Below are positions 13,471 through 59,043 of a stretch of DNA of 64,000 bases, one piece after another. How positions within the stretch are numbered: the first letter of the stretch is position 1; each line of letters opens with the position of its first letter. The translations under genes were made by a program, and so were the position numbers. This stretch comes from Macrostomum lignano (taxonomy: Eukaryota), in assembly GCA_002269645.1 (NCBI GenBank), contig NIVC01000975.1:1-64000 (forward strand), read 5' to 3'. The notes beneath the pieces are model-generated. The model did no database searches and was not told the DNA's origin. It was given only the letters and a program-made list of their open reading frames with translations.

Positions 13471-13471
13471 A

Positions 13472-17477: not shown

Positions 17478-17549
17478 GGATAAAACTCTTTCTCTGTGTT
17501 TCTTTGGGCTGTTTCTTGTATCGTAGATTAGCGTGCGCGCATTCACTCA

Positions 17550-19065: not shown

Positions 19066-19371
19066 ACAGGCAGGCAGACAGACAGACAGACAGACAGACA
19101 GAAAGACTGTAGACAGACAGAAAGACAGAAAGACTGTAGACAGACAGAAAGACTGTAGACAGACAGAAAGACTGTAGACAGACAGAAAGACAGACAGACA
19201 GGCAGGCAGACAGACAGACAGACAGACAGAAAGACTGTAGACAGACAAAGACTGTAGACAGACAGAAAGACAGAAAGACTGTAGACAGACAGAAAGACTG
19301 TAGACAGACAGAAAGACTGTAGACAGACAGAAAGACTGTAGACAGACAGACAGACAGACAGACAGGCAGGC

Positions 19372-24238: not shown

Positions 24239-26522
24239 GGCGGACGGATGAGCTGACTAAAAGAGGAAAGTACGAGCGGGGAAAAAGTGCTTTGACTGTA
24301 CGAGTTCGACCATATTTCAAGTATAAATTGTGCTGCAAGGGAATTGTTTAAAGAAATGGCCATGAATGCGACGGTTGCTTTTAAGCTACTTTTAGTAATA
24401 TAGCAATGTAGGTAAAGCAGTTTTTGTAATCTTTTTGCCGTTTTGTGCACACTTTTTAGGCCTACGTTTGAATTTGTTGGGGATTTCAAATACCTTTTAA
24501 ATATCTTTCATATTATTGCTTAAATAATATTATATAAAGTTGCATACCTTTATCTCCGTCGAATTAACAGTTTAAGAGAAATCATTAGAAGTATTGAAAC
24601 TGGTTCCAGTTACTGAATTTCAAATAGTATAATAACTTTAAAATGTGATGGCACTCACTCACCCGAACATCGGCTTGTATACTAATTCAGCACTTTATAA
24701 AGAGGACACGGCAATCAATAATGTACATTAAGATCAATGCACAAACTTTTATGTACAACGCATGCGCACTTATCTTATCTTTTCCTGCCCCTCCGGCCCC
24801 TTTGTCGCCCTAGCCGAAACCTCATTTAGTTGATTTCACAAGCCCTCTCAACCACCCACCCCACTCCCAAGTCGCTCATTCCCCCGCGATACTGTCTGAT
24901 TGGCTGGCTGAAGACGTAGTAAAAATTTAGAGCCAAGAAGAGCGACAGGCAGGTCAAGACTACTGAGGAAAAAAATCAATTGAACACCTTCACCATACGA
25001 GCGCAGTGGCCCTTCGGTAAAGATATTCCAGAGGTCAGAATTTAGTGTAAACAGAAATTTTCAATCTTGTTTGCCACTGCCAGAAAAACAGAAGATCGAT
25101 AAAGGACGTTGCTTCGTTTTTGTTTGATGGCTTTAGATCGATATAAGCTGGACCGATGCTCTTAGTGTCTGGTGTCATTCAAGACCCCTAGATCTTGTTA
25201 ATTTACAAACACAAGATGTCAATCAAATAAGAAATGCAAATTCATTCAGTGAGAAAACTTTTTAGACGATTTTCAAGAAAGTTTTACAAGGAAAGTCAGT
25301 CTAATTATAATGAAGTGGCAGCACACTCTCCATACATCATTCCCTTGTATGCAAAAAGTGCAAGTTTTTCTGATGAGGCGGCGTATTGAGAGGAAGCAGC
25401 AAACTTCCCTAAGCTCATCACTTCACTCCCCCTCTCCCTTCCCCCTCTCTCTCCCTCTTTTTTTGCGTAGAATTTCTGTCGCACAAAAGGCAAACTATAA
25501 CAACAGCAGCAGCAGCAGCAGCAGCAGCAGTTCATAAGCTAAAGGCTTCAAAAAAAAGACGTTGGGTCTTCATCAGCTTTACTCTCTCTTTTCTCAGCCT
25601 TCCCAGCTTTGCCTTTTGCTTCTCTTCTTTGCACTCTTTATACGTAGTTATATAGTTCTAGGGGGCGCCAAGCCTATATAATACATAGGTCGCATATTGG
25701 CCCAGCCTCTATTATTGCTCAGGGAACTTACGCTCGTATCTAGACAAGGCCAATCCTTCTCTAACCGTCATTCAAATTTGAGACTGACTGAGTATAGTGT
25801 GAGATACCGCCATGCAGTGAGAGAGATTGTGGGACAGAGAGATAATCGATAGACTCTCCCAGCAGCGCCCATGCAGCGAGACAGCGGTTCAATTAAAATC
25901 TGTCAGTTTACAACCCTCTCCCGTGAGAGTCAATTTTTCCCAAGTCCAAGAAGCTAGCAGCGATTTCGAGCAGGCTGTGCGCAGTGCAATGCAATATATC
26001 GAATTCCTTCACCAGATTTCTAAGGCGGGAGAAAAAAAAATCAATTTCATTTTCTCTGACAGTTTTTGTTGTGAATTTCTGCGCCCGGCTAATCTCAGCC
26101 TTGGCTCTGACCTGATCCTCTAGCAGTAAAAGTTCAAAGGCGAGCGTAAAATTCCACGCAACTTCGCCTTCTCCTCTAACCAACCCTCCCTGCAGCTCCT
26201 TCCCCGCCTAGCAACCAGTAAAATCTATCAAATGTCAATTTTCATAAGTCGCAACCGCAGTTCCTCTCCTACCAATCAATAAACTCCTCCTTTCCCTTTG
26301 CTGCCAGCCGACTCGGAGGTCGAAAGCGAAATTCTAACCGAGTTCAGTCTCTCATTATTAATTCAGCTAGGCCGGGAATTAAGCTTTGCCCCAAATCCCA
26401 ATTAGAATCCGTGCTAGCATTCTAATGCCTATGCAGAATTACCTCCACTGACTTCAATTTCGGACTTGGAATGAAAGTACAAGTTTTTAACTGTTAATTA
26501 TGTCTTCAAGATACTTAAATCG

Positions 26523-33701: not shown

Positions 33702-33707
33702 TTTATT
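33702..33707 (-). terminator. Candidate polyadenylation signal of the Cys-loop receptor gene
   Basis: AATAAA on the minus strand ~170 nt after the constant-exon stop. Confidence 0.45.
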
Positions 33708-33877: not shown

Positions 33878-34364
33878 TTACGCCTTGTCCGCCTCCCCCG
33901 TGTCGATCTTGACAACCAGCACAAGATAGTAGAGCCAATAGAAACAGTTGTACAGCAGGAAGCAGGCCGGGAACAGGAACCGGCTGTAGGCGTCGATGTC
34001 GGAGTCCGGGGAGGGCACCGGCGAGGCCGTCTGAGCGGCACCGCCTCCGCTGGCGCCTTTGCCGCCCTCCTCTACGCTGACCACCAGAAGGTCTTCGAGC
34101 TCCTCTGGGAAACCCGGATAGCCGTGCGCGTTGCCGGCGGAGGCTACGGCGGCTGAGCCGGGAGTCGGCAGGCCCGGTGGCGGACCCCGGATGACGGCGA
34201 GTCGCTGGAGTTCCGAGCGAACCACGCAGCGAATCTCCTGCTGCCAGTTCTCCATTTTGGTTCGACGGGCGCGGAATGAAGCGACGGCGAATTCGATCAG
34301 GGCGCCGATGACGAACATGATGCTGGCGATGATCCAGATGTCTATAGCCTTGATGTACGCCACT
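33878..34364 (-). CDS. Cys-loop (GluCl-like) receptor shared terminal exon: M2-M3 loop end, M3, intracellular loop, M4
   Basis: Acceptor ...GCTAAGAGCTCCCCAATACCTCCTCCACCAG|A GTG GCG TAC restores LPR-VAYIKAIDIW with a phase-2 donor. M3 is DIWIIASIMFVIGALIEFAV; M4 is DIDAYSRFLFPACFLLYNCFYWLYYL. Stop TAA at 33878. Confidence 0.95.
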
Positions 34365-37300
34365 CTGGTGGAGGAGGTATTGGGGAGCTCTTAGCATCTG
34401 TGTGTTTGCATTGCGATTCGAATGATGGGTCGAAGTCTTCCAAATGAGATAAATAGCCTATTTTATTAGCCTCTCAGAGCATGTAGATGAATTTATGCGA
34501 TGTATTATAATGTCTCAACTATAATCAATTAATAGTATTAACATTCAATCTCTAAATTTATGCAAATTAGTGCTGAAAATGATTTTAATATCTTAGTTCA
34601 ATTTTCAGACTCCGTCATCAGCTCATAGCCGATTTACTTGCAGATTGTTGTGAATCCAGGGCCCCCGAAAGAAGAGCTGAACTGAATTCCCCTAGACCGA
34701 GCCGACGAGTGCCCTCATGCAGAATTCCCCATCAAGTATTCGAGTGAGTGGCTGCGTCGGGACTGCACCGTTCCCTCCTCTCTCCCTACTCCTCTTGGAT
34801 TCCTCAAGCCAAGATTTTGCAGTCCCTGCCAGTTGGTCTCTCCGCGGGTTTCCTGCTTCCAGGCAGGCACAGAAACTTGGATAGCCGCCCCTAGAAGTCC
34901 TTCGTTTCTCTCTGTCTCTCTCTCCTCTCTCCTCGGGCATTTCGGAATCGGAATTCGGGCTCTGGGGTGCCGGTGGGGCTGAGTTAGAATCGCAGGCCAG
35001 CATAGACTTCAGTCGAAATGTCGCCTTCTGAGAGAGCTGAACTACCTTCGACTCATTTTCTCTACTCCCTCCCGCAGCCGTGCAGGCCACTGCTAACTCC
35101 ACTCCTCGCTGTCTAAAACTCCCCCTTTCAGATTCTCTCCCTCCGCTGTTCCTCGAACCTGCGTTGAGTTCAAACTCCCCTCACACAGTCCAAGAAACGA
35201 GGTGGAGGGACTTCGGTCGAGGGTGGAAAGGGGGGAAGATTTGAGACAGCGGGAGTCGCAGGCAGAGTCTCTGGAGAGCCGCTGACAGGATGACAAGAGT
35301 GAGTAGTCGAGGATTTTGTTTTGGTCAGGAGAGGCTCAACGTGAGATCGAACCGTACCTCAATTCAAACTGAAAATTTCCGGCCTCAACTGCCACTCTCC
35401 AGCCATGATAACGACGCTTTCTCAGCCTCTTCGGAATGCCAATTCTTGTAGAATCAACAAATATAAAAGCTCAAAATCTGACAACATCCCGTTTTTTAGC
35501 TCAAGACGTCAAGGCTTCTCTTGTTGTTGCCATTGGACACGATGCAGCTGCTATAGCTAAAATGTTAAACACTGGTGAAGGGACTTTGGCAGAGCTATGG
35601 GCAGGGCAGAAACGATGCATCGGCATCAGCAAGTGAGTTATCGATCTGCTGTGAGCTGTCGTCAGCACAGGCAGTGAGGGAGAAGACACTGAGGGAGTGA
35701 GTAGGCGGAGCTGGAGGAGAGAAAGATGGGAGCGAGAGAGAGAAAAGAAAACTACAAAGCAGCATCCAGTAATTTTCAAAGCAACGATGCATCCCACGGC
35801 GCTATTAGCAATTTTAGGCCCTAATAATGAAGGCCGAAATGAGTCAAACACGACAGGGGGCTCAGAAAGTAGCCGAGTCTACTCCTGACTTACTGGAATG
35901 TTTACAAGGCTGATGAAATGTACTTTATTTGTTGTGCATATACATCCTCAGATTCGTTGCATCCGATTATTTTTTGGCGAAAATTTTCCACTCCCGTAAA
36001 CGAGAAGAAACAAGGCAGTTTTCTTGGCAACATTCGGCCAGCCAGGGCTGCATGGTCAGGAGGTTGGGGGGGGGGCGAAGGAGGTGAAGCCACGGGCCGG
36101 GGGAAGGCTGACGAGCTGACGAGCCGCTGCATGTCACATCCGCTTGACAACAGGGAGATCAGCCGGGGCGTCAGAAACAGCTACAACAACAGCAAAAGCA
36201 GAAGAAGCAGAACCAACAGCAACACCTAGAAGACTGGCAGAACTGTTCCTTGCCGCAACTCTCGCAATGCGCCTTCTTGCTTGGAGAACGGTATAAGGGG
36301 ACAGTGAAAAGAGGCAGGGGGGAGAGGGCGTGGCTGATTGAGCCCCGGGGAGATACAGAGCCGCTGCAGTTGAAAGGCCTGTATAAACAGAGCCCCCGGG
36401 GTTCCCCTAGTTGGTCGTCCGGTCCATCAGGAGTGCGATTCTGTGAAAAAAAGGGAAGCTGCTTTGCTTTGCCGAGACATGCAGGGGCAGCGAGAGAGAA
36501 TTTAAAAAAAGAGGAATACAGACGCGGAAAAATATACAGACAGGGACCTTGGAATGGAGAGAAAGTGTAGGCGCACTGTTTCAGTTTTCGGAACTGGAAC
36601 AGCTGCCGCTGCCTCTACTGATTGCCTCAGGGGGAGTAAGGGAGCTCTTGCTCTGGTCCGAGCTGACCACTGAGCTCAAAACCTTTCAGCCTTTCCCCCA
36701 GCCAAGAAAAGAGATTTTCTTTTATAAAGCGAAAACACTTTAAAACGGTCTTTTTCCTATTTTCATAGAAACTGGCATGCAGTTACTAAGCTGACTTGGG
36801 CGAGTCGGCCGAGTGGGGACTCGAGAGCGCGGGGGGGTTCTCTTCCACTTCAATCCAATTCCGCTGCTGCGTCAGCTCGAGAATGAGCATTCCCAGAGAA
36901 GCAACTTTTCTCTCTCTCTCTCTCTAAGGCCGGTTAAACACGCATCTCCTTAGGCTAAGCGGGCAGTCAGAGAAACTGGGAGAGCACTGCTGCCAGCCTG
37001 GGGTCAATCAGGCTGAGAGCTGGACCCTGAATGTGAACAAGAGTGGACGGGAGTGCTGAGTCCACAATGTGGTTGTGTGTGTACTGGGGGGGGGAAGTTA
37101 GTTGATGCAGTGGAAAATCAGAGGGGAAATTTGTCGATTGGTCCGAAATTCGACAAATAACTTCAGAATTCGGTTCTGGTTGGGACTTGCGCCGCTCTCT
37201 TTCCTGGCTCGCTGTGTTTGCACAAACTCCCGGATAGCAAACTCAAAAAGACGGTTGTTCTTCATCTTTTACTTCTTTCTGTCTCTGTCTTTTCTTTTGC

Positions 37301-37772
37301 TTTTTCATGCCAGCCTCCTTGGCACGTATTTTTGGGACTTTGGTGAATCAACAAATCATTTAGTATTTTCGGGTACGTGATGCCTTGCATAGAAAATGAA
37401 GAAAGAATTTTTTTGAGCAGCATCCACCATCACATATTTAACTTTCACTGTGATAGCTCAGACTGTGATAGCAAAGTTTCGATCTTCTTGGTAATTTCTC
37501 TCCAAACTTGATAGTTTTTATCGTCTAAAGCCCCTCCTAGAGGCTAAGGCTCAGTCAACCGCATCATCATTTCTCAGCTGAATCCATTTTTCCAGTTCTT
37601 GGTTATGCAAAGTAGGCGGCTGGTTTGCGAGATTTACGGCCGGGACGTGGCCAGATGATTGAGCAGAGAGGCAGCGACAATACGTCAAGGATATGGAAAT
37701 GAGCATCGGGATACGATCCCACGGGCTCAATTTCCCTAGAAGGATGGGCCCTCGTCTCCTGACTAGTCTCAC

Positions 37773-38788
37773 CTGGGCAAATTTCCCATCACGGTCGAAG
37801 CCTGAGTGAGAATGCCCAGCAGAGTGAGCAGTCCCAGAGTCACCCTGGCGGGCACGGCCTCAATGTTGACCCAAAAGTTCAGCCAGCTGACTGTCACGAT
37901 GAGGATAGAAGGGATGTAGGTCCCAGCAAGGTAGCTGCTCAGCTGCCTCTCCAGTTTGAACTCCGCCTTGAGGCAGGCGTAGGCGCCAGTGCTGGTGGCG
38001 CTGCCTTTGGTGCAGTCGATGGTCTTTGCTTTGCCGGGCGTGTTGAACTCGGCAATCTGCATTGAAGTGTCCAGCTCCACCGGCTGTTTGTCCTTGTCCT
38101 GCTTCCACTTGAACAGCAGATTCTTGGTTGTGTAACCGTAACTGCCGATGTTGACGAAGCAGTTCTGCATGTCCATGGGGAATGTCTGCAGCTGCATCTG
38201 GCAGGAGAACTTCATGGTAATCTTCTGCGAGTACAGGATGTCACCGTTCGGACCCACTCGGATTAGATAATTTGGCTGCGTCATCTTGTGCAGGTAACCC
38301 TCTTTTCCGTTGCGAAAGAAAAGATCCGGCAGCCACAGCTGCTCCTTCTTGGCCGGTATAGCGATGGAGTCATTGTAGAACTTAAACTGCGGGATATTCT
38401 CCCAGCTGAGCCGGTGATCGCGCCAGAACTGCCTCAGGTACATGTCCAAGCTGAACTCCATATTGATGACGTCGACCTTGTTGATGCTGAGAATTTTCAT
38501 GTTCACGTCGACTTTAGTCGGCGGCTCAAACGGTTTTCCACCTTCAACCAGCGGCGGCTGCGGCTTGCCGCCCATCGTATCAATAACTTCCACTGGCCGC
38601 TGGTGCTTGTTGTAGTTGGTAAAGATTTTCTCAACAATGCGGTCTACTATGTTGGTGTAGTTTGAGGCCGTGGTGCCCGCCGAGGCCGGCAAGGGCTTCA
38701 GCAGCAGCAGCGGCAGCAGCGGCAGCAGCAGCGACAGCGAAAGCTTCGTGCACCGCCGGTTGCAGTCTGGCGCCGCCGCCGTCGCCAT
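37773..38788 (-). CDS. Cys-loop receptor variable exon V3 (proximal): signal peptide, ligand-binding domain, M1, M2
   Basis: Signal peptide LSLSLLLPLLPLLLLKPLPASA. Loop A WLPDLFFRNGK. Cys-loop CQMQLQTFPMDMQNC. Second Cys pair in loop C. Anion-channel PAR motif. Donor CCC AG|GTGAGA. Spliced to the constant exon it gives 1503 nt, a 500-aa ORF. Confidence 0.95.
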
Positions 38789-40733
38789 GCCGACACTCTC
38801 CGCTCGCGGTTGTCCACTTCTGAGTCAGGCTGCGTTGCTGCTTGATTGTCGGACCCGAAGACTACCTGAATAGCCCTGGTTGATCCCAGAACATTTGATC
38901 GGGATTATGACGACGAGGTGATGGTGCTTGGAAGAAGACGGATGCCCAGTCGCGAGGCCTGCCAGCTTTAGGCGTTTTTTAGAGGTCCGGGTAAGTTGAG
39001 TTCAGACGGGTACCGGATTGGCACGGTGACTGCCTGCCCCCACTCTGCCCCGAGTACGCTCGGCCAATGACGGGGCGACCTCTCTCCTTCCCTCAGAATA
39101 CTGGATGAAAAAGAGGAGTATTTTACACTCGCTGATCTATTATTCCCCGTGGCTACAATTTTGTTATTTCTAATGAATCCCTGAACCCTTCTTCAGGCTT
39201 CAATGTGTCCACGCACCTAATAAGAGATTTTATCAACTGCCTGTTTTATTCCCGCACTAACTTCAGCATCTCGCATCAGCACGACAAAAACCGCGTTGCT
39301 GCCATCGCTGTAGAAACGAACTGATGCGGTGCTGTCTCTATCTGCACGAACTGTTACAATAACACTGTATACAGTTTTATGTCCATCAAGCAACATCCAA
39401 GTGTCGCATCTGCTTCTAAGCCACCCGCGGCTCCGCAGCTTAGATTAGTTGAGATTAAGCGAGAGTTCGCGCAAAATAAAGAGGCCTGAATGACAGGTTA
39501 GAGGAAATTAACTAATATTCAGGCAATGGGACATTGTGTGCGCGCGTGAATTAACGCGAGGAGAAGAAGCCCAGGTGCGCATGTGCGTGTGTGTGTGTGC
39601 AGCACAGGGTGTTACAAAAATGCTGTGTGGTCTTCTCACAGCAGCAGCAGCTGGTGTCAGTCACACAGCTGATGACAGGCGTAAAGTCAAGCCACTCAGG
39701 CTGAAATCACCTTTCCGGTCCAAAGGAGGAACAGAGGCGAGTATGGAGAGATGGCTTGGCTGGAGGGACAGGCGTGGAACAAGGGAGAGAGGCAGGGTCG
39801 GGTTGAGAGACACGGCGCGGTGTATAGAATTCCGGTTGAGTTGATGCAGCTGCGTCAATGTTGGGACCGCGAGGGAAGCTGAAGTCTTCTCTCCTAAAAG
39901 TTCCCGAAACTCCCTCCTGACAAGTAAAAAAAGTATTACAGTGCACAGACAGACGGCAGCGCGATGGCTATGAATATAGAATCCATTGCCATTAAATGCG
40001 CGTTTCACTTGGTCAAGGGAGTTGCAATTTAGTATGAATAATTTGATACACGAGTCTGGCGAACCGGGAGCCAATGTGCGTGTTTATGCTAAGCATGGAC
40101 TTCCGCCGAAAACTGCCTAGGAAGGGGTGGGCTCAGGCAAAAGTGTGCTCGACGGAGCCTTTGGACCAAGGAGACCTGAGACCTGGGACGCAGAACAGTT
40201 TTTTAAATTCTGGATCCATTTTCAGGCGTAATGGTTTCAAGCTCAATCGAATGTCCACCAAATAAACATTTAAAACATGTCAATAAGGGCTCGTAATACG
40301 AACGTATAGTTAAAAAAAACTTTTAAATGCAAAACCCAAAAATATTGCATGTTCCCAAACTTCTGCCGAAACTGGACTCTTCTCTTTAGAGCTTAATCAA
40401 CTCCCGAAGCTTAGAGAGCAAAAATTTACAAGTTCAATGAAGCCTATTTTTATATTTTACAAACTGACGTGCTAAATCACTACTTGTAAGTAGCATATGC
40501 AGTATCAGTAGCCCTACTAAATTTGATATCAATAAGGCCGATCCGGAATTTAAGTCGAGAGGTTTTTCCAGCTCGCGGATCGCTTGGGTAGCTCAAGAGA
40601 GTCAAAGAATTCGAAGATCTGTGGCTCAGTTGTCCGTGGCAATTCGAATGGGACACGGATAGCTACTAGTTGGTCCAAGTTACAAGCGTCTGAGCTGTTT
40701 AGGGATAGTTTGCATAGCTACGCCTATTCTTAC

Positions 40734-41554
40734 CTGGGCAGCCAGTTAGCAAAAGTACAAATGTGAGCCAAAATGCACAGCAGCGTTAGTAATAGCAGCA
40801 GAGTTCGCGTCTGAAGCGCCGCTGTGCCGAACCAGAAGCTTAGCCAGCTGATTGACACGATGATCATCGATGGCACGTACACAGCCAACAGGTAAGGGAC
40901 AATGTGGCGCTTCAGTTTGAATTCCACTTTCAAGTAAGGATAGAAACCGGAGGAGGTAGCGCTGCCTCTTGAACAGTCGATGAGTTCCAGCTCAGCAGGC
41001 GCTTGAAACTCGCTAATCTGCATCGCGGAGTCTAACTCAATAGCTTTTCTGTATTCTGTGTTGTGCCACCGCAGTAACTGACGATTCGTTGTGTGGCGAT
41101 AGCTTCCGATGTGAATTCTACAATTCTGCGTATCAAATGGAAATGTCTGCAGCTGCATGTGGCAGGAGAACTTCACTGTGGTCTTCTGCGAGTAGAGGAC
41201 GTTCCCGTTGCGCTGAACCTTGATGAGATGGTTCGGCTGAGCCATCTTGTGCTGGTAGCCTTCGTTGCCGTTCCAAAAATACACATCAGGCAGCCACAGC
41301 GTGTCCTTCGCATTCGAAAAGTCGATGGAATCAAAATAAGATTGGTACTGCCGAAAACTCTCCCAATCCAGTCGGCGGTCTTGCCAGAACATTCTCAGGT
41401 ACATTTCGACACTGAACTCCATGCTGACTGGGTCAATGTTGCTGATTCTCAAAATCTTGATTGTCAAATTCACTTTGACAGGTCCATCTTGATACATTGG
41501 CACCTGTTCTTTGTAGTAATCAAACTTCCTGTCGAAAATTGGTCCCGGAAACAA
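40734..41554 (-). CDS. Cys-loop receptor variable exon V2 (divergent; no signal peptide or ATG visible; atypical subunit or decaying cassette)
   Basis: Cys-loop CHMQLQTFPFDTQNC, M1 YLLAVYVPSMIIVSISWLSFW, donor CCC AG|GTAAGA in the same phase. In-frame TGA at 41555-41557 upstream. PAR is replaced by QTR. Confidence 0.75.
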
Positions 41555-41796
41555 TCAGGAAAATTTTCGTCCCCACTTTCGTTCAGAGATTTCAAAACAA
41601 TTTTTATGGATGATAATTGCAGCAAATTTGGCACTTGCAAGCGAAATGCTAGCTAATGCAGTGTCCCTAAAAGAATAAGCTGGTTGCTTTGGTCACACTG
41701 TCTTCTCTTTATATCTTCGAGCAATCATTGAGTTATGTGATGGAGCCTTAACAGGTGAGAGGATGCTGACTGACAAATCTGACTCAGTCTCATTGG

Positions 41797-42754
41797 CACA
41801 GGGGCGTCGCCATCGGAGGGGGGACATGAGGACATGCCCCCTCCAGTAAAAGCTATGGGGGGACATGCTACCCCACCTTGTGACTCGTGGTTGAAATCAA
41901 TAATTTTGCTTCAGGGCGACAAAACATCGCGCCTACTGCGCCAAAATGAGTGCCTGCGGCGCGAAAATGAGTGCCTGCGGCGGTTAGATAAGTGCCTGCG
42001 GCGCTAAAATGAGTGCCTGTGGCGCCAAAATGAGTGCCTGTGGTGCCAAAATGAGTGCCTGCGGCGCTAAAATGAGTGCCTGCGGCGCCAAAATGAGTGC
42101 CTGCGGCGCCAAAATGAGTGCCTGCGGCGCCAAAATGAGTGCCTGCGGCGCCAAAATGAGTGCCTGCGGCGCTAAAATGAGTGCCTGCGGCGCCAAAATG
42201 AGTGCCTGCGGCGCCAAAATGAGTGCCTGTGGTGCCAAAATGAGTGCCTGCGGCGCTAAAATGAGTGCCTGCGGCGCTAAAATGAGTGCCTGCGGCGCCA
42301 AAATGAGTGCCTGCGGCGCCAAAATGAGTGCCTGCGGCGCTAAACGCTAAAATGAGTGCCTGCGGTGCCAAAATGAGTGCCTGCGGCGCTAAAATGAGTG
42401 CCTGCGGCGCTAAAATGAGTGCCTGTGGCGCCAAAATGAGTGCCTGTGGCGCCAAAATGAGTGCCTGCGGCGCCAAAATGAGTGCCTGCGGCGCTAAAAT
42501 GAGTGCCTGCGGCGCCAAAATGAGTGCCTGCGGCGCTAAAATGAGTGCCTGCGGCGCTAAAATGAGTGCCTGCGGCGCTAAAATGAGTGCCTGCGGCGCT
42601 AAAATGAGTGCCTGCGGCGCTAAAATGAGTGCCTGCGTTGAAAAAATGAGCGCTGACGACACCGATTCTGAAAATAATGTACATGTAGGAATTTATTCAT
42701 GTACATGTTCATGTAGAATACACCCACCATAAAACCCATGGCGGCGCCCCTGTG
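41797..42754. mobile_element. MITE-like element with ~17-bp TIRs enclosing a 21-bp tandem array
   Basis: Left end CACAGGGGCGTCGCCAT; right end ATGGCGGCGCCCCTGTG (1 mismatch). Subterminal GGGGGACATGAGGACATGCCCCC hairpin. No clear TSD. Confidence 0.65.
41930..42645. repeat. 21-bp minisatellite, ~33 copies
   Basis: Unit AAAATGAGTGCCTGCGGCGC(C/T). Confidence 0.96.
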
Positions 42755-45407
42755 ACATTTCAGGTAGTGAATCCATTCCCAGGAAAGACTCCGGAAGGTG
42801 TTGTACTGGTGACTACGAAACTATATTAGTTATCGTTCATTCAGTCACAATAAGTCTGTCTTGTTTCTGTGTCAGCTCAAGTTGTTCGTTGATCCGTCAC
42901 GGCAAGAATATTGCTGCATCGACAGTTATAAAAAAGGTGTAAATTCTGTTAGTCAGCTGCGCAGACTGACAAGCACACGGATTTAATTTGTTGAATTGGG
43001 TTCAAGTACAAACTTCTTCAAACTTCAGTGGACAGGCCGACAGCTGACTAGCAAACATTGGCTTATTTTTGTAGCCATGTCTAGAATTTTCCTCATCAGA
43101 ATACTGCGCAGTTCCACGAAAGAAGGACTTGTAAGTTAACTAATGAAGCTTCTAATAAACAATTTTTGCCTGCGAATTTTTCCTACCATATTGTCCTTTC
43201 TGGGAGTCGGCTGCAGCTCAGTTGCTCGACTGAGTAAATTCAATTTAAAGACGCTTGGGAAACTTTTCTGCTTTTCGTCTGCTGGGTTGAGCAATCCGAA
43301 TCTGCGACAGAATCGACAGGACGCGAGTGAACAACCATGGCTCATCGACTTCTTCATCCGGGCAGCTAATTAGAAAAGAAGAATGCCAGGCCTCCGTGTC
43401 TGGGGTTCAGATTCGGTTATGGCCTGATTGAACAAGTTCTACTCATTTACTGTAAGTTTGACTACATTTTTACCAAATCCGTGGGGCAGGACTTACTAAT
43501 CAAAAATGCATGCCATTCTGAGCCAAACTCTGGCCCCAGTAGCCCCTTTAGCAAATCGAAAATCAACTGTAACTCGAGACTAATTTCCATGGACTGCATG
43601 GCTAGAATTGGTAAATTGACACCGTATGCACGGCGACTTGAGCTGTGCGTTGCTCAAGGCATAAGAGGAACCTTTTTTATACAACAGCAGGGACCTAGCT
43701 GTGTTCCTGTCAAGACAAGCAATAGTTATCACTAACTAAGGGGCTGCTATAGAGAGGATCGATTCAAAAATACTGTAATTAAGCGAGTCTATTCGGTAAG
43801 ACTTAGCAACTAAGCAACTAAGACAGGGAATCTATCCACTCAATTGATAGAACGCGCCTCTTTCTGCTTTTCTGCCAGCCAGAGACGGTTTCGATTGATT
43901 TTACGATCTTTTGCAACCGTCTGCTCCTGCGCTTGAGCTTAGATGCATTATAGCAGAAAGATCTTCTGAGGAGGTATGAGGGGAGGGCATGATGGCCCAT
44001 TGGAGTGGAAAAGAATTAGCCTTTGATTATAGGCCGAGCCACCGATCTCATCGTCAATGAGCAGCTCGCGGCTGAATGCGCGGCTCGCTCACGTAGTACG
44101 GTACAGGTATTGGCCAAGCGATTTTCGCTGTTAGTACTATACTAGCATGATATGATTTCATGTTCCCATATTGTAGAGTATAATAACGGTATTATGGCTT
44201 GTTAAGCTACAGAGGCTGCAATCTAAGATCCCCGAATCCCACTATCTCCCTATCCTTTCATCAATGGGCTGCGTGTCCATCAATGACAGCTGTTTCTACT
44301 GCAGGTTTACAGAGAACATTTCGTTCTTAAGGTTCGATTGTAAGGCAGAAAGTCGCACGATGTCTGATCACTAATACACGCACCTGTCCCATCTCTGTCA
44401 ATACATTTAATGTGCACCCCAAGTCAGCAGAGACCGCCGAGCTTCATTCCATTTGGTAGCGAATATCGTCATGCAGTAATGCAGTTGTCAATGTTGACAC
44501 AGCGGGGTTAGGTTAGTGCAAACAGCTGGATCGGGGGGGGGCATATGTGAGTTTTAAAACCTAATATAAGACAGCAGAAGTTGAAGGTAGCTCATGCACT
44601 CCCTATTAGCTACCATCGCAATTCTTTACTCTTACGAGTGCCTCGTTAGTCTCGGAATGAGACTTTGAGTAGAAAAAAAGTTCAGAGAGTCACGCCGCAA
44701 AGGAAGTGAGACAGCCCCCCTGCTGCTAGCCCAGCCTCTGCTGCTATGGTGGGCGCGCAGCTTTCTTCTTCTCTTTAGTCAAAGTTTAGTCGCAAAAAAC
44801 GTTAAGAGGCAACGAGGAATGCTCTGACTGCCTGGAGAGTGTGGCGATGCGTTGAAAACAGCGCCAACCTCCCCCCTCTCTCTCTAATCCCTTCTCCCCA
44901 GGCCTGGCAATTAGTGTGAGCAGGCCCGTTGCAACTTTCGGACTTTTCTCTGTGAGTCTCTGAGTGACCAGCTGCTTGGAGCAGAGCACGATGAACTGTG
45001 CACGTCTGGCGTCTGTGTGTGCGTGCGTGCCCAGAGCCGAGAGAGACGTGACGCACCAACAAGGGGCACGCGAAACGAAAGCGAAAGTTGAGGAGAGAAA
45101 GAGGAGCTCGCTATATAGCAAGAGAAAGAAAAGCAAAAGATGTCGCCGAAGATTTCCTCAAAGTTTCTCTCCGGAGAGGAAGACTTGAAGTTTGGGGATT
45201 TGAGTCGAGAGTGCGGGAAGAAAAAAGGTAACGAAGATCGGGAGAGAGACCTGAGGGGCAGGCCTGAACAGGTCAAGAAGGCCTTCTCTAATTGCGATCA
45301 GATTGCCGCCATGTGAGCCTTCCGTTGTGTATTACTTATTCAAGCAAATTAAAAATAGCACCGAGGTGTCGACTGAGGGCGCATGACTCAGCGAGGCTGA
45401 CTCTTAC

Positions 45408-46354
45408 CTGGGCAAGTTGTTGATGACGGACATGCCCTGGGTTAGGATGCCGAGCAGAGTGAGCACGCCGAGGGACACGCGAGCCGGTATGGCCTCAACG
45501 CTGATCCAGAAGTTCAGCCAGCTGACTGTCACGATGAGAATCGCGGGAATGTAGGTGCTGGACAGGTAACTGCCGAGCTGCCTCTCGAGGTTGAAGACAA
45601 CCAACAGGCAGGCGTAGGCGCCGGTGCTGGTGGCGCTGCCCTTCGTGCAGTCGATGGTCTCGGCGCTGCTCGGCGTGTTGAACTCCGAGATTTGCATTTT
45701 GTCCAGCTCCACTGAGGCTTTATTCTCGTCTCGTTTCCATCGAAACAGCAGGTTTCGAGTTGTGTATCCGTAGCTGCCAATATTCACAGTGCAGGTCTGC
45801 GTGTCCATCGGGAACGTCTGCAGCTGCATCTGGCAAGCGTACCGCATTGTAACCTTCTGCGAGTACAGGATGTGCCCATTCGGCTCAACTCGGATTAGAT
45901 AATTTGGCTGCGTCATCTCGTGCAGGTAGCCTTGCTTTCCATTGCGAAAGAAAAGATCTGGCAGCCACAGTTGCTCCTTCTTGGCCGGTATAGCGATGGA
46001 GTCATTGTAGAACTTGAACTGCGGGATATTCTCCCAGCTGAGCCGGTGATCGCGCCAGAACTGCCTCAGGTACATGTCCAGCGTGAACTCCATATTGATG
46101 ACGTCGACCTTGTTGATGCTGAGAATTTTCATGTTCACTAACACGAGTGTCGGGTCTTCCTCCAGTTTGCCGTCCTTGTTCTGCCTGCTGGCCGGCACGG
46201 GTCTCTGGTGCTTGTTGTAGTTGGTGAAGATGTGCCCTACGATTCGGTCCACAATGTTGGTGTAGTTCGGCTTCATTCCAGCTTGGCCTGATGCGGTCCC
46301 GAGCATCAGGAGAACCGAAGCTGCAACTAGTGTTGCTAGGCCCAGCGGCTGCAT
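45408..46354 (-). CDS. Cys-loop receptor variable exon V1 (distal): signal peptide, ligand-binding domain, M1, M2
   Basis: ATG at 46354 (GCCATG), signal peptide MQPLGLATLVAASVLLMLGTASG. WLPDLFFRNGK, Cys-loop CQMQLQTFPMDTQTC, PARVSLG. Donor CCC AG|GTAAGA. Spliced to the constant exon it gives 1434 nt, a 477-aa ORF. Confidence 0.93.
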
Positions 46355-48280
46355 GGCAACGTGGCAGTGGTTCTCCGCTGAGTTGCAGACCACCGCGTCT
46401 CCCTGCTACTTGTATGCAGGCCTCGCAGCTGAGGGCACCACAGCTTTGGCTTTTGTCCTTATGCGCTTCTTTGTCTGGCTTCCGGCCCGGGTTTAATCCA
46501 GCCGCGCGCTCAAGTCAGCTCGCTCTCGCTCCACCGTGCCGGATTAAAGTCGAGGCGCTCCGGGCCTCTCCCGAGCCCTCCCGGTCTGAATAGAAGTCTT
46601 TTGTCTCTCCCTCTAGCTGGCTTTCTCAACCCAAGTGTGATGAGGCTTGAGAGTTTTGCAAACGAAACCTGAATTCTGAGTTGCTGGGTTAGGAGAGACT
46701 TTTCGCGTGCTCCTGCTGTACCTGCCCGCCCTGCCTCCTGGCTCTCGCGTTTCCTCAACGGAACCGGAGCTCTGGCGGCTGCGAGTAAGGAAGGTACAAA
46801 GCTATCGTGGGGGATGTTTTTGTAGGAAAAGCTGCTGGATAGTTGCGGGGAGAAATCTTTTGGCGGAAGGCCTGGGGAACGGCTGAACTTTAGGCAACGG
46901 GGGGGAGGAGGGGAGCCTGAATGGAGGAGACTTCAATCGTCTAAAGCAGGTGGCAAAAAAACTGAGAAAGGACGAGGACGGGGAGCTATTTTGCCTTTTC
47001 CTTCATTGCCAACCTCCTCCCTCAGCATCCAGCCCGGCGGGCTCCAACCGCCTCTCGCGCCTCAGAAAATGGAAGTCTGTTGGCTGCAGGCGCGGACTCC
47101 GGCACTGCACAGCCAGCCCGGCCCGTTCCTCAGCGTGGGAACCAATAGCAGAAGTCCGATGGCACAACTAAGAAGCTTTCCGCGAAACGAATGAAGATCC
47201 ACTGCTGCTTAAGCGGAGCAAAATGTTGAGGGTTGAGAACTGGGAACTGGGAGGGGGACTGGCATGGCCCCTCCGGCCAATTCCATTCTACATGTTCTGC
47301 TTGCGCTTATGGTAGTCCTATCTATCTACCGGTTTGGAAAACTCTTCTCATCGATATGTTGGGCTGGGAAATCTCGGATTTTCTCAAGAGAGATTCTATT
47401 ATTAGATCGTTTGATCCAGGGGGAGGGGAGGGGCCAGTCGCTCTAAAAGGGAGGACCTTTCTTTTCTCATTTTGCTTCTCCTTGTACCAGAGAGGCGGAA
47501 TTTGGGAAATGTCAGCTGTCAAGACTTCGGACTTCCCAGGCCACCCCCTCCGCCCCTTGGGGCTGGTCGGAGTACAAGAAGGTCTGAGGAACAGAGGGAG
47601 GCCGCAACCGGTTATGCATCGATCTAGTTAGAGACGATTTAGTGCGAGACTTTAGAAAAGCGATCTGAACTAAAAAGCTGCTGTCAGAGACAAAGAGTCT
47701 CAACTTCGATTGCCTGCGGCAGAGACCTAAAACTGTTGAACCTCGGTGACTTTCTCTAGCAGTTAAACGTTTTCGTTTCTAAGAATAGTTACCTACCGCC
47801 TGAGTTTTTTTAATTGGCTTAGTTCAAATGCGGTGAATTTCTCTTTAAAACTGACCTCGCGTGTCCTGCAGCCTACCGGGTTCTCTGAACTGATTGACTG
47901 GGAAGAAAAATGGAAAGCCACACAATTTGACAAACGCAGCCTACTGATTTGGCCTTGCGCTGTAGGGCTGATGCTGAAATATGCGACTGCTTGGCACGAG
48001 GCTGCAAGCTGTGAAGCACCTGACCCAAGCTTGGGGTTTTAGCGCGTGTGGGCGTCATCTGTGCAGCGCTATAGAGCGACCTTGATTGCGACTGCTGACT
48101 GTCACGTTTGGCGGGATGAAAAACTGGGATCCATCGTTTGTTCCTGAACACATCCAGTTCGACAAACTTTTCTTAGCGCTAATTGGCAGGTTGCAAGACC
48201 AGTTTGACATTTCTGTTCGGTCGATGAAATCTAGAGGGAAGATTTACATGTAGTCTTGACAACCGAGCGGTGCGAAATTA

Positions 48281-51348: not shown

Positions 51349-54265
51349 TCACACAGCCAGTAAGAGAGTCACACAGCCAGTAAGAGAGTCACACAGCCAG
51401 TAAGAGAGTCACACAGCCAGTAAGAGAGTCACACAGCCAGTAAGAGAGCCACAAAGCCAGTAAGAGAGTCACACAGCCAGTAAGAGAGGCACAGCCAGTA
51501 AGAAAGTCACACAGTCAGTAAGAGAGTCACACAGCCAGTAAGAGAGTCACACAGCCAGTAAGAGAGTCACACAGCCAGTAAGAGAGTCACACAGCCAGTA
51601 AGAGAGTCACACAGCCAGTAAGAGAGTCACACAGCAAGAAACAGAGTCACACAGCCAGTAAGAAAGTCACACAGGCAGTACGAGAGCCACACAGCCAGTA
51701 AGAGAGTCACACAGCCAGTAAGAGAGTCACACAGCCAGTAAGAGAGTCACACAGCCAGTAAGAGAGTCACACAGCCAGTAAGAGAGTCACACAGCCAGTA
51801 AGAGAGTCACACAGCCAGTAAGAGAGTCACACAGCCAGTAAGAGAGTCACACAGCCAGTAAGAGAGTCACACAGCCAGTAAGAGAGTCACACAGCCAGTA
51901 AGAGAGCCACACAGCCAGTAAGAGAGTCACACAGCCAGTAAGAGAGTCACACAGCCAGTAAAAGAGTCACACAGCCAGTAAGAGAGTCACACAGCCAGTA
52001 AGAGAGTCACACAGCCAGTAAGAGAGTCACACAGCCAGTAAGAGAGTCACACAGCCAGTAAGAGAGTCACACAGCCAGTAAGAGAGTCACACAGCCAGTA
52101 AGAGAGTCACACAGCCAGTAAGAGAGTCACACAGCCAGTAAGAGAGTCACACAGCCAGTAAGAGAGTCACACAGCCAGTAAGAGAGTTACACAGCCAGTA
52201 AGAGAGTCACACAGCCAGTAAGAGAGTCACACAGCCAGTAAGAGAGCCACACAGCCAGTAAGAGAGTCACACAGCCAGTAAGAGAGTCACACAGCCAGTA
52301 AGAGAGTCACACAGCCAGTAAGAGAGTCACACAGCCAGTAAGAGAGTCACACAGCCAGTAAGAGAGTCACACAGCCAGTAAGAGAGTCACACAGCCAGTA
52401 AGAGAGTCACACAGCCAGTAAGAGAGTCACACAGCCAGTAAGAGAGTCACACAGCCAGTAAGAGAGTCACACAGCCAGTAAGAGAGTCACACAGCCAGTA
52501 AGAGAGTCACACAGCAAGAAACAGAGTCACACAGCCAGTAAGAGAGTCACACAGCCAGTAAGAGAGTCACACAGCCAGTAAGAGAGTCACACAGCCAGTA
52601 AGAGAGTCACACAGCCAGTAAGAGAGTCACACAGCAAGAAACAGAGTCACACAGCCAGTAAGAGAGTCACACAGCAAGAAACAGAGCCACACAGCCAGTA
52701 AGAGAGTCACACAGCCAGTAAGAGAGTCACACAGCAAGAAACAGAGTCACACAGCCAGTAAGAAAGTCACACAGGCAGTACGAGAGCCACACAGCCAGTA
52801 AGAGAGTCACACAGCCAGTAAGAGAGTCACACAGCCAGTAAGAGAGTCACACAGCAAGAAACAGAGTCACACAGCCAGTAAGAGAGTCACACAGCAAGAA
52901 ACAGAGCCACACAGCCAGTAAGAGAGTCACACAGCCAGTAAGAGAGTCACACAGCCAGTAAGAGAGTCACAGCCAGTAAGAGAGTCACACAGCAAGAAAC
53001 AGGTCACACAGCCAGTAAGAGAGTCACAGCCAGTAAGAGAGTCACACAGCCAGTAAGAGAGTCACACAGCCAGTAAGAGAGTCACACAGCCAGTAAGAGA
53101 GTCACACAGCCAGTAAGAGAGTCACACAGCCAGTAAGAGAGTCACACAGCCAGTAAGAGAGTCACACAGCCAGTAAGAGAGTCACACAGCCAGTAAGAGA
53201 GTCACACAGCCAGTAAGAGAGTCACACAGCCAGTAAGAGAGTCACACAGCCAGTAAGAGAGTCACACAGCCAGTAAGAGAGTCACACAGCCAGTAAGAGG
53301 GTCACACAGCCAGTAAGAGGGTCACACAGCCAGTAAGAGAGTCACACAGCCAGTAAGAGAGTCACACAGCCAGTAAGAGAGTCACACAGCCAGTAAGAGA
53401 GCCACACAGCCAGTAAGAGAGTCACACAGCCAGTAAGAGAGCCACACATCCAGTAAGAGAGTCACACAGCCAGTAAGAGAGTCACACAGCCAGTAAGAGA
53501 GTCACACAGCCAGTAAGAGAGTCACACAGCCAGTAAGAGAGTCACACAGCAAGAAACAGAGTCACACAGCCAGTAAGAGAGTCACACAGCCAGTAAGAGA
53601 GTCACACAGCCAGTAAGAGAGTCACACAGCAAGAAACAGAGTCACACAGCCAGTAAGAGAGTCACACAGCCAGTAAGAGAGCCACAAAGCCAGTAAGAGA
53701 GTCACACAGGCAGTACGAGAGCCACACAGCCAGTAAGAGAGTCACACAGCCAGTAAGAGAGTCACACAGCCAGTAAGAGAGTCACACAGCCAGTAAGAGA
53801 GGCACAGCCAGTAAGAAAGTCACACAGCCAGTAAGAGAGTCACACAGTCAGTAAGAGAGTCACACAGCCAGTAAGAGAGTCACACAGCAAGAAACAGAGT
53901 CACACAGCCAGTAAGAAAGTCACACAGGCAGTACGAGAGCCACACAGCCAGTAAGAGAGTCACACAGCCAGTAAGAGAGTCACACAGCCAGTAAGAGAGT
54001 CACACAGCCAGTAAGAGAGTCACACAGCCAGTAAGAGAGTCACACAGCAAGAAACAGAGTCACACAGCCAGTAAGAGAGTCACACAGCCAGTAAGAGAGT
54101 CACACAGCCAGTAAGAGAGTCACAGCCAGTAAGAGAGTCACACAGCAAGAAACAGGTCACACAGCCAGTAAGAGAGTCACACAGCCAGTAAGAGAGTCAC
54201 ACAGCCAGTAAGAGAGTCACACAGCCAGTAAGAGAGTCACACAGCCAGTAAGAGAGTCACACAGT
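51349..54265. repeat. 20-bp minisatellite, ~145 copies (2.9 kb)
   Basis: Unit CACACAGCCAGTAAGAGAGT, with recurring variants such as CACACAGCAAGAAACAGAGT. Confidence 0.98.
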
Positions 54266-58645: not shown

Positions 58646-59043
58646 ACTGACTGATTGACTGACTTTTTTACACTGACAGTGTGGCCGCTGTCAGTAGGAT
58701 GTACAGCACATTGTACTATAAGTTGTCAGTGCAATTTTAATTTATTCAAATATTGCAATACCTTAAATTTTAAGCCATCTAAATGTATTAATGCATGCAT
58801 CATTGAAGCTGTGTAAACATTCAAGTGAGAATATTAATCTCCTTGTTAGCTTACTTGTATACAATTGCTTTGGCAAATCATAGCGCAAATTACTATTAGT
58901 ATTGAAAATCCTGTTAATTTTAGCAGGCTAAACGAAAGATTATGTATAAACCAATACCATAGCACATCTTAGTTTAAATACACTCGTAATCTTTGGGGTT
59001 AAACTAAAGAACCCCAAGCAACTGAAAAGCAACTTAACAAAAC

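What the first reader, a model, noticed from the sequence alone, without database searches (positions are those of the whole stretch)
33878..46354. Protocadherin/UGT1A-style variable-constant Cys-loop receptor locus: three alternative ligand-binding+pore exons share one M3-M4 exon
Seen in sequence: three tandem minus-strand exons each encode ECD+M1+M2 and end at the same codon with the same phase-2 donor (CCC AG|GT at 45408, 40734, 37773). I found only one M3-M4 exon, at 33878-34364; its acceptor restores LPR|VAYIKAIDIW. No M3/M4-like frame is visible between the cassettes. V1 and V3 have their own ATG and signal peptide and splice into full ORFs of 477 and 500 aa. Established knowledge: pLGIC subunit diversity usually comes from separate genes or small alternative exons, while variable first exons joined to a constant region are typical of clustered protocadherins and UGT1A. 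Inference: promoter choice, alternative SL trans-splice sites or mutually exclusive splicing makes a subunit family with different binding sites and pores but identical M3, intracellular loop and M4. I am not aware of this layout being described for a Cys-loop receptor.
Basis: partly seen in the sequence, partly recalled or inferred. Interest (0 to 1): 0.93.

Follow-up and report, generated by a model that had tools for sequence, protein, structure and literature searches.

The report
Flatworm chloride-channel gene with alternative front halves
[quoted passage not shown] The same layout is kept in three sister loci, so one gene very probably makes two different channel subunits that share their rear end.

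Summary
On the minus strand lie three large ECD+M1+M2 exons: V1 45408-46354, V2 40734-41554 and V3 37773-38788. All three have phase-2 GT donors. There is one M3-M4 exon, 33878-34364. Sensitive searches find no other M3/M4 in the window or in any sister locus.

The genome is Macrostomum lignano Mlig_3_7. The layout recurs in all copies of this locus and, as two V exons plus one C exon, in three paralogous loci.

- **Two V classes.** "a" (V1-like) and "b" (V3-like) exons predate the locus duplications.
- **Selection.** Both classes are under strong purifying selection. Their middles are homogenised by gene conversion within each locus.
- **RNA evidence.** My in-silico splice of the distal a-exon to the shared C exon of paralogous locus C is letter-for-letter GenBank protein PAA70662.1/PAA71747.1. 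That protein comes from an RNA-seq-guided annotation.
- **V2.** It is probably degenerate. It has no ATG or signal peptide, its PAR motif is lost, M1 is deleted in two of three copies, and constraint is relaxed.

There is no RNA evidence for this locus itself, none for any b-exon junction, and none for how a V exon is chosen. I found no published description. The nearest known case, C. elegans unc-49, is the mirror image. Novelty: new variant of a known kind.

The parts
45408..46354 (-). V1, the a-class variable first coding exon. It encodes ATG, signal peptide, extracellular ligand-binding domain, M1 and M2, and ends ...QGMSVINNLP(R). The donor is CCCAG|GTAAGA, phase 2.
   Evidence: Pfam LBD and memb hits. 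The three copies of the locus differ by 3 synonymous and 1 non-synonymous codons. It is orthologous to the Va exons of loci B, C and D.
40734..41554 (-). V2, a divergent ECD+M1+M2 ORF and probably a decaying or non-canonical exon. It has no ATG or leader. A candidate acceptor ttttcgacag|G puts the first exon base at 41528. The donor CCCAG|GTAAGA is kept.
   Evidence: It is about 48% identical to every other V exon and occurs only in locus A. Pfam finds the LBD only. PAR is QTR and loop-C Cys is Tyr. C647 and C724 carry an 81-nt in-frame deletion of M1.
37773..38788 (-). V3, the b-class variable first coding exon. It encodes ATG, signal peptide, ECD, M1 and M2, and ends ...QASTVMGNLP(R). The donor is CCCAG|GTGAGA, phase 2.
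   Evidence: It is orthologous to the Vb exons of loci B, C and D. Copies differ by 8-10 synonymous and 0-2 non-synonymous codons.
33878..34364 (-). The constant exon. Its first base completes the Arg codon. It then encodes M3, the intracellular loop, M4 and the stop codon. The acceptor is cctcctccaccag|A.
   Evidence: It is the only M3/M4 match in the window. Its protein is identical in the three copies, which differ by 5 synonymous and 0 non-synonymous codons.
33702..33707 (-). AATAAA, a candidate polyadenylation signal 173 nt after the stop codon.
   Evidence: This is a motif match only.
34365..45407 (-). The intron that a V1-to-C splice would remove (11,043 nt). It contains V2, V3 and a 21-bp tandem array.
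   Evidence: Inferred from the splice sites. By analogy, the 7.2-kb Va-to-C intron of locus C is used in GenBank CDS PAA70662.1.
45971..46139 (-). Gene-conversion tract in V1, about 98% identical to V3 38339-38507. The rest of the two exons is 65-85% identical.
38339..38507 (-). Gene-conversion tract in V3, the partner of the V1 tract.
41931..42637 (.). 21-bp tandem repeat array (33 copies) in the V1-V2 interval. It is not coding.

Best explanation
The region is one complex gene of Macrostomum lignano for anion-selective Cys-loop receptor subunits of the flatworm GluCl/GlyR-like clade. It is built as variable 5' coding exons plus one constant 3' exon.

V1 (a-class) and V3 (b-class) are alternative first coding exons. 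Each supplies its own start codon, signal peptide, ligand-binding domain, M1 and pore-lining M2. Each ends at the same codon with a phase-2 GT donor. Either donor is spliced to the single acceptor of the C exon, which adds M3, the cytoplasmic loop and M4. When V1 is used, V2 and V3 are removed as part of an 11-kb intron.

The products are two subunits. They differ in the N-terminal region, in the segment I place at loops F and C, and in M2 and the M2-M3 linker. They share M3, the cytoplasmic loop and M4.

The a/b pair arose by duplication of the V exon before the locus was copied into four paralogous loci. Both classes have been kept by selection since then, while gene conversion within each locus homogenises the middle of the ECD. 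V2 is a third, older duplicate confined to this locus and is probably losing function.

Shown: the anatomy, its conservation, the selection, and an RNA-derived a-exon+C CDS in a paralogous locus.

Inferred: that V1-to-C and V3-to-C are both spliced in this locus. How the V exon is chosen is also inferred. The candidates are separate promoters, or competition between the cis donor and the spliced leader.
For: 1. Anatomy is as described.

2. There is no other M3/M4 anywhere in the window or in the Va-Vb intervals of the sister loci.

3. The whole-genome search shows the same layout in all three copies of this locus (C975, C647, C724). It shows Va-Vb-C in loci B (C110, C691, C762), C (C1142, C1215 twice) and D (C1037, C4852, C1484).

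4. Every Va and Vb has its own ATG plus hydrophobic leader and a GT donor in the same phase. Every C exon has a pyrimidine-rich ...cag| acceptor. These fit the M. lignano consensus of GT[G/A]AG donor and CAG acceptor.

5. Class signatures are fixed. All a-exons end QGMSVINNLPR and all b-exons end QASTVM[GA][NS]LPR. A tree of the exon ends splits a from b with 96/98 support. The exon middle groups by locus with 97-100 support, and the AU test rejects an a-class clade there at p=3e-49.

6. Purifying selection is strong. NG86 omega between loci is 0.04-0.21 for a-exons and 0.09-0.27 for b-exons. Between recent copies, a-exons show about 31 synonymous to 2 non-synonymous codon differences. C exons show at least 13 synonymous to 0-1 non-synonymous.

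7. The in-silico product of locus-C Va plus C, skipping Vb (474 aa), is exactly GenBank PAA70662.1 / PAA71747.1 (sequence). That annotation was built from RNA-seq (StringTie/TACO) and a de novo transcriptome (PMC5730564).

8. A second GenBank CDS, PAA70668.1, uses the same Va donor. It lands on an exon of a repeat inserted in the Va-Vb intron of copy C1215b. This shows that transcripts starting at Va run into that intron.
Against: - I could not see any transcript or read for the window's own locus. None of A-V1+C, A-V3+C or any b-exon+C product is in the 15-billion-protein collection.
- The absence of b+C models could mean that b-exons are rarely or never spliced to C. It could also result from the annotation's --isoform-frac 0.75 filter. 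That second reading is my inference.
- No conserved promoter element, TATA box or SL-acceptor motif was found upstream of V1 or V3.
- The PAA70662 evidence is second-hand, because it is a deposited model, and it comes from a paralogue 80-87% identical to this locus.
- I chose the partitions for the mosaic tree after seeing the sliding-window identities.
Confidence: 0.74

Rival explanations
1. Only one V exon per locus is productive. It could be the distal a-exon, as in the deposited model, or the proximal b-exon, by adjacency. The other V exon would be a silent partial duplicate sitting upstream of the gene or in its intron.
For: Only a-exon models exist in the databases and no b+C product was found. 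There is no RNA evidence for the window's locus.
Against: - Both classes keep open frames, start codons, leaders and in-phase donors in 4 loci with about 3 copies each.
- Omega between loci is 0.04-0.27 for both classes.
- Recent copies differ almost only synonymously.
- V2 shows what relaxed constraint looks like here: a deletion, lost motifs and 2 synonymous to 4 non-synonymous changes.
- Class-specific ends have been maintained against gene conversion.
Confidence: 0.12
2. The a-exons (V1) encode truncated ECD-M1-M2 proteins without M3-M4. These could be modulatory or dominant-negative subunits. The mRNA would be unspliced, since a stop follows the donor at once (AGG TAA), or spliced to non-receptor exons.
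For: - PAA70668.1 is Va plus a 66-aa repeat-derived tail.
- The in-frame stop lies inside the donor consensus.
- Older gene models end Va with unrelated tails.
Against: - The exact Va+C CDS is in the RNA-based annotation.
- The stop follows simply from the GTAAG/GTGAG consensus.
- The repeat-derived tail exists in only one copy, which carries an insertion.
- There is no canonical poly(A) signal within about 1 kb of the V1 donor.
Confidence: 0.06
3. Read-through concatenation. V2 (acceptor ttttcgacag|G) and perhaps V3 (ctgactcag|A, 36 nt upstream of its ATG) are used as internal exons. Both candidate acceptors are in phase with the upstream donors. The products would be tandem ECD-M1-M2-ECD-M1-M2-M3-M4 proteins, whose membrane topology would still be consistent.
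For: Phase compatibility and open frames across both candidate junctions, read directly from the sequence.
Against: - A phase match has a 1-in-3 chance.
- Neither site matches the M. lignano acceptor preferences well.
- No such long protein exists in the databases.
- The deposited locus-C model skips Vb.
- V2 is degenerate.
Confidence: 0.03
4. Assembly artefact. The private M3-M4 exons of V1 and V2 would have been collapsed or lost in the redundant, repeat-rich Mlig_3_7 assembly.
For: The assembly is redundant and error-prone. Examples are a low-quality fourth copy on C889 with 110 gaps over 6.2 kb, frameshifted copies on C762, C3883 and C1141, and only 64% error-free bases by REAPR.
Against: - At least twelve independently assembled copies in four loci show the same V-V-C order.
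- The whole-genome search with the C exon finds no orphan M3-M4 exons of this subfamily.
- The window has no gaps.
Confidence: 0.02

Closest known systems
C. elegans unc-49 GABA-A receptor locus (Bamber et al. 1999, as summarised in PMC6920096). The avr-14 GluCl gene has a similar arrangement; that statement rests on my own knowledge.
   Same: One complex pLGIC locus yields several subunits by joining a shared block of exons to one of several tandem, duplicated alternative blocks. In unc-49 the products (B and C) co-assemble.
   Different: The arrangement is the mirror image. unc-49 shares most of the N-terminal extracellular domain and varies the rest, including all transmembrane segments. 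Here the whole ECD, M1 and M2 vary, and M3, the loop and M4 are shared. Choice therefore has to happen at the 5' end, by start site or SL, not by 3' exon-block choice.
Clustered protocadherin and UGT1A loci, and chelicerate sDscam (multiple variable first exons joined to constant exons; PMC1885805, PMC7811963, PMC9258826).
   Same: Tandem large first coding exons each have their own start and signal peptide and a 5' donor only. All join one constant region that encodes the C-terminal, cytoplasmic part. Gene conversion occurs among variable exons.
   Different: There are only 2 working variable exons per locus (3 here, counting V2), compared with 10-60 in those loci. No conserved promoter element was detected. 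Promoter choice is not demonstrated. The protein family is different, and the constant part here includes two membrane helices.
Schistosoma mansoni SmGluCl-2 and SmGluCl-3 (Dufour et al. 2013, PMC3757052).
   Same: These are the closest functionally characterised proteins, with about 50% identity to V1+C and V3+C. They form homomeric glutamate-gated chloride channels. They share the PAR motif, the Cys-loop and the loop-C Cys pair.
   Different: The schistosome genes are single-exon genes. They have no V/C intron and no alternative halves.
Solved structures: zebrafish GlyR alpha1 (6ubs and others) and C. elegans GluCl alpha (3rhw).
   Same: phmmer E-values are 1.6e-73 and 8.9e-68 over ECD to M3, and M4 also aligns. 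This is the ordinary anionic pLGIC fold.
   Different: Sequence relatives only. They carry no information on gene layout.

Membership tests
Anionic Cys-loop receptor (pLGIC), GluCl/GlyR-like | Neur_chan_LBD followed by Neur_chan_memb | tested here: met
   V1+C scores PF02931 at 2.2e-45 and PF02932 at 3e-28. V3 matches both. The C exon matches PF02932 positions 52-128. V2 matches PF02931 only.
Anionic Cys-loop receptor (pLGIC), GluCl/GlyR-like | Cys-loop C-x13-C, second (loop C) Cys pair, and the PAR motif before M2 that marks anion selectivity | tested here: met
   Read. V1 has CQMQLQTFPMDTQTC, DCTKGSATSTGAYAC and IPARVSLG, and V3 is equivalent. V2 fails two of the three in the window allele: loop-C Cys is Tyr and PAR is QTR.
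Anionic Cys-loop receptor (pLGIC), GluCl/GlyR-like | Four transmembrane helices M1-M4 in one polypeptide | tested here: met
   This is met only after splicing V to C. M1-M2 lie in the V exons and M3-M4 in the C exon.
Anionic Cys-loop receptor (pLGIC), GluCl/GlyR-like | Gated by glutamate and conducts chloride | not testable with these tools
   Inferred only from about 50% identity to SmGluCl-2, which is glutamate-gated.
Variable-first-exon / constant-exon locus (Pcdh, UGT1A type) | Tandem array of homologous large first coding exons, each with its own ATG and leader and a donor but no private downstream exons | tested here: met
   Met for V1 and V3 and for Va/Vb in loci B, C and D. Not met for V2, which has no ATG or leader.
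Variable-first-exon / constant-exon locus (Pcdh, UGT1A type) | Each variable exon is actually spliced to the common constant exon | tested here: inconclusive
   Distal Va+C of paralogous locus C is exactly the RNA-derived GenBank CDS PAA70662.1. No product with a b-exon, and none from the window's own locus, is on record.
Variable-first-exon / constant-exon locus (Pcdh, UGT1A type) | Each variable exon has its own promoter, and choice is made by promoter selection | tested here: inconclusive
   No k-mer is shared by the eight upstream regions beyond what shuffles give. There is no TATA box or YTNCAG within 200-400 nt of the V1 or V3 ATG. TATAAAA lies 55-75 nt upstream of the ATG in B-Vb and D-Vb only. 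TSS data are needed.
unc-49-type complex pLGIC locus | Shared N-terminal exons joined to alternative C-terminal blocks | tested here: not met
   The orientation is reversed here: variable N-terminal exons and a shared C-terminal exon. It works in a similar way but is not the same layout.

The most novel reading that the evidence does not exclude
The a/b pair is a built-in two-subunit system. One locus would deliver either of two subunits with different binding sites and pores but the same M3, cytoplasmic loop and M4. The choice would be made at the 5' end, by separate promoters or by competition between the V1 cis donor and the spliced leader for downstream acceptors. The two subunits would be deployed in different neurons, or co-assembled as obligate partners as UNC-49B and UNC-49C are. 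The arrangement would have been preserved through four locus duplications while gene conversion is kept out of the ligand-binding loops and M2. If so, this is the first variable-5'/constant-3' Cys-loop receptor locus.
Probability: 0.3. Interest if true: 0.8.

Novelty: new variant of a known kind. Interest (0 to 1): 0.64.

Why it matters
Subunit diversity of pentameric ligand-gated channels is normally explained by separate genes or small alternative exons. Here the whole ligand-binding domain and the pore-lining helix appear to be swapped as one unit onto a fixed M3-loop-M4 module.

- **Modularity.** The module boundary at the M2-M3 linker would be tolerated by evolution in four loci. This is a natural experiment on pLGIC modularity.
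- **Comparison with unc-49.** The locus offers the mirror-image case for studying how complex receptor loci arise and how isoforms are chosen.
- **Annotation.** Automatic gene finders gave the a-exons unrelated tails or truncated them (P0005, P0113, P0114). Subunit counts in flatworms, whose GluCl-like channels are studied as anthelmintic targets, may therefore be wrong.
- **Tractability.** M. lignano is transgenic-tractable, so the choice mechanism could be tested directly.

Tried and rejected
- **Sequence allowance.** Some Va-Vb intervals in loci A (other copies), B and C are therefore only partly read. Locus D and the window are complete.
- **Protein collection.** Three homology searches, including a junction-centred 224-aa query meant to catch transcript fragments, found no M. 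lignano protein with a b-exon. They also found no protein spanning a V/C junction other than cluster member P0112.
- **Other flatworms.** Orthologue proteins from Logan, ENA and NCBI gave no pair sharing an identical C-terminus with different N-termini. No comparative evidence outside M. lignano was obtained.
- **Supplements and text.** Searches for Mlig000841, Mlig026840 and PAA70662 found nothing.
- **Promoter element.** The search for a shared upstream element was negative.
- **Possible M3 relic.** A 17-aa match just after the locus-C Va donor (E=2.6) was inspected and dismissed as chance.
- **C889 as pseudogene control.** The copy with stop codons was first considered as a control. It is a low-quality contig end with 110 gaps, so it was not used.
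- **Whole-exon tree.** The tree of whole V exons was unresolved because of gene conversion. Partitioning the alignment resolved it.
Full report
**1. Observation**

The window carries four minus-strand open frames of a Cys-loop receptor: 45404-46405 (V1), 40730-41554 (V2), 37769-38824 (V3) and 33878-34390 (C).

- The three V frames end ...LPR, with donors CCCAG|GTAAGA, CCCAG|GTAAGA and CCCAG|GTGAGA. The last exon bases are 45408, 40734 and 37773.
- The C frame is preceded by cctcctccaccag|A at 34364. Any V donor therefore completes an Arg codon and continues VAYIKAIDIW.
- V1+C is 477 aa and V3+C is 500 aa. Each starts at its own ATG with a hydrophobic leader.
- Pfam finds Neur_chan_LBD plus the first part of Neur_chan_memb in V1 and V3. 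The C exon matches the following part of the membrane profile, positions 52-128 of 233.
- The window has no N.
- tblastn at E<=10 and HMMs of M3 and M4 find no second M3-M4.

**2. Where it comes from**

The genome (764.4 Mb, 5269 contigs) is Macrostomum lignano Mlig_3_7. The best database relatives are M. lignano proteins with BOX15_Mlig locus tags, and the size matches the published assembly (PMC5730564). That assembly is known to be redundant, because the DV1 line has extra chromosome copies. This explains why nearly every locus appears about three times.

The protein family is the flatworm GluCl-like clade. Identity to S. mansoni SmGluCl-2 is about 50%. SmGluCl-2 forms glutamate-gated chloride channels and is a single-exon gene. 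The closest solved structures are GlyR alpha1 and GluCl alpha.

**3. The layout is conserved, not accidental**

Whole-genome searches with the C exon and with V1 gave the following.

| Locus | Contigs | Layout |
|---|---|---|
| A | C975 (window), C647, C724 | V1-V2-V3-C |
| B | C110, C691, C762 | Va-Vb-C |
| C | C1142, C1215 (two inverted copies) | Va-Vb-C |
| D | C1037, C4852, C1484 | Va-Vb-C |

- A low-quality fourth copy of locus A lies at the end of C889.
- No orphan M3-M4 exon of this subfamily exists anywhere in the genome.
- None is hidden in the Va-Vb intervals that I could read.
- Every Va and Vb has its own ATG and leader and a GT donor in the same phase.
- Every C exon has a pyrimidine-rich cag| acceptor.

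**4. Two ancient classes, selection and gene conversion**

- All distal exons (V1, Va) end LGILTQGMSVINNLPR and share RPVPxxRQxxDGxxEED near the N-terminus.
- All proximal exons (V3, Vb) end LGILTQASTVM[GA][NS]LPR and carry a longer N-terminal insert.
- A tree of the exon ends separates class a from class b across the four loci with 96/98 support. By my alignment-position estimate, these ends cover the N-terminal part, the loop F/loop C region, and M1-M2.
- The middle of the ECD groups by locus with 97-100 support, and an a-class clade is rejected there at AU p=3e-49. I chose the partitions.
- So the V duplication predates the four loci. Gene conversion within each locus has since homogenised the middle. 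In the window the tract is 45971-46139 paired with 38339-38507. The ends stay class-specific.

Selection:

- NG86 omega between loci is 0.04-0.21 for a-exons and 0.09-0.27 for b-exons.
- Between the recent copies of each locus, a-exons differ by about 31 synonymous and 2 non-synonymous codons.
- Non-synonymous codon differences between copies are 0-2 per pair for b-exons in loci A-C, but up to 11 in locus D. They are 0-1 for C exons.

Exons without a private M3-M4 that stay under this constraint in four loci must be translated as part of something. The only M3-M4 available is the shared one.

**5. RNA-level evidence**

I spliced all eight V+C combinations in silico and looked them up by exact sequence.

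- One is on record. Locus-C distal Va plus C, skipping Vb, is 474 aa. It equals GenBank PAA70662.1 / PAA71747.1 (BOX15_Mlig000841g2/g5, UniRef100_A0A267FF10).
- The GenBank annotation is a genome-guided transcriptome built from StringTie/TACO, a de novo assembly and the TBONE pipeline. The model therefore rests on RNA.
- A second CDS on the same contig, PAA70668.1, uses the same Va donor. It continues into a 66-aa tail that maps to a repeat of at least 40 copies. One copy sits in the enlarged Va-Vb intron of C1215b. So transcripts that start at Va do run into that intron and take the next usable acceptor.
- No b-exon product and no product of the window's own locus is on record.
- TACO was run with --isoform-frac 0.75, which may have removed a less abundant b+C isoform. 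That is my inference.

**6. V2**

- V2 is found only in locus A and is about 48% identical to all other V exons.
- It lacks an ATG and leader.
- It fails the Pfam membrane profile.
- It has QTR in place of PAR, and Tyr in place of the second loop-C Cys in the window allele.
- Both other copies carry an 81-nt in-frame deletion that removes M1.
- Allelic changes are 2 synonymous to 4 non-synonymous, more in C724.
- Its long open frame and omega of about 0.2 against the other V exons suggest it was functional for much of its history.
- It has a candidate acceptor, ttttcgacag|G, with first exon base 41528. This is in phase with the V1 donor. I regard that as probably a coincidence.
- My estimate is that V2 is a decaying exon, with a probability of about 0.75-0.8.

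**7. Mechanism**

- Most likely (0.74), V1 and V3 are alternative first coding exons joined to one C exon.
- The two subunits would differ in binding-site loops and in M2. The M2 differences are 2' S/T, 5' V/L, 15' G/A, and 16'-20' MSVIN against STVMG. M3, the cytoplasmic loop and M4 would be identical.
- How the exon is chosen is open. I found no shared upstream element, no TATA box and no SL-acceptor motif next to V1 or V3.
- A canonical AATAAA lies 173 nt after the C-exon stop. None lies within about 1 kb after the V1 donor.
- The rivals are: one class silent; truncated a-products; in-frame concatenation; assembly error. They are listed separately with their evidence.

**8. Comparison and novelty**

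- The closest known receptor locus is C. elegans unc-49. It shares the N-terminal part and varies the C-terminal blocks, so it is the mirror image of this locus.
- The logic of variable first exons joined to constant exons is that of clustered protocadherins, UGT1A and sDscam. Promoter choice, their defining mechanism, is untested here.
- Literature searches found no Cys-loop receptor locus of this kind and nothing on these M. lignano genes.
- The Va+C model has been in GenBank since 2017 without comment.
- I class the finding as a new variant of a known kind, with interest about 0.64. It is well supported by comparative evidence and one deposited RNA model, but it lacks direct transcript proof at this locus.

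Noticed in passing
window 9617-13609 (-), with 34-bp tandem arrays at 8955-9268 and 13713-14067: A 1330-aa open frame with RT, RNase H and integrase domains, so an LTR-retrotransposon pol of Ty3/gypsy type. It is apparently intact and is flanked on both sides by arrays of the same 34-bp unit.
   Followed up: partly
window 8070-8951 (+): A 293-aa open frame with BTB/POZ and BACK domains, probably an exon of a Kelch-like gene. It lies next to the retrotransposon.
   Followed up: no
window 21614-24256 (-): An 880-aa open frame in a 65% G+C stretch with no Pfam match. It is unexplained.
   Followed up: no
window 51349-54264, 15312-16925, 59043-60014, 63139-63737 and others: Very large tandem arrays, for example a 20-bp unit in 146 copies. 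They account for the strong GC and AT skew blocks in the composition profile, and are typical of this repeat-rich genome.
   Followed up: no
G000 C1215:99.7-115 kb against 61-69.7 kb; repeat exon at C1215:106030-106227: Contig C1215 holds two inverted copies of locus C. In one, the Va-Vb intron has grown from about 4.8 kb to about 11 kb and carries a copy of a dispersed repeat (at least 40 copies in the genome). The annotated CDS PAA70668.1 splices Va onto an exon of that repeat, which truncates the receptor.
   Followed up: partly
G000 C1142:10282-13330 and 16239-19308: The Vb-C unit is present twice in tandem and identical, downstream of one Va. This is either a very recent duplication or an assembly repeat.
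   Followed up: no
G000 C762:188494-189422; C1484:102439-103455; C3883; C1141: Some copies of the b-exons or a-exons are frameshifted or have an altered N-terminus. With this PacBio-era assembly I cannot tell real pseudogenisation from indel errors.
   Followed up: no
locus C Vb donor region (e.g. C1215:62998 downstream): About 45 nt into the intron after the locus-C Vb donor there is a degenerate second copy of the exon end (ATGGCCAATCTGCCCAAGTAGCAGG). This is a small local duplication of the splice-site region.
   Followed up: no
window 38789-38826 (-), just upstream of the V3 ATG: The motif ctgactcag|A lies 36 nt upstream of the V3 ATG. It is in phase with the V1 and V2 donors, and the frame is open from there into V3. 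If it were used as an acceptor, V1-V3 fusions would stay in frame. This is probably chance.
   Followed up: partly
G000 C177 / C178 (about 392-421 kb and 49-78 kb): Another, more distant pLGIC subfamily shows several ECD-like exons on both strands near a single M3-like hit. It might be another multi-exon complex and was not examined.
   Followed up: no
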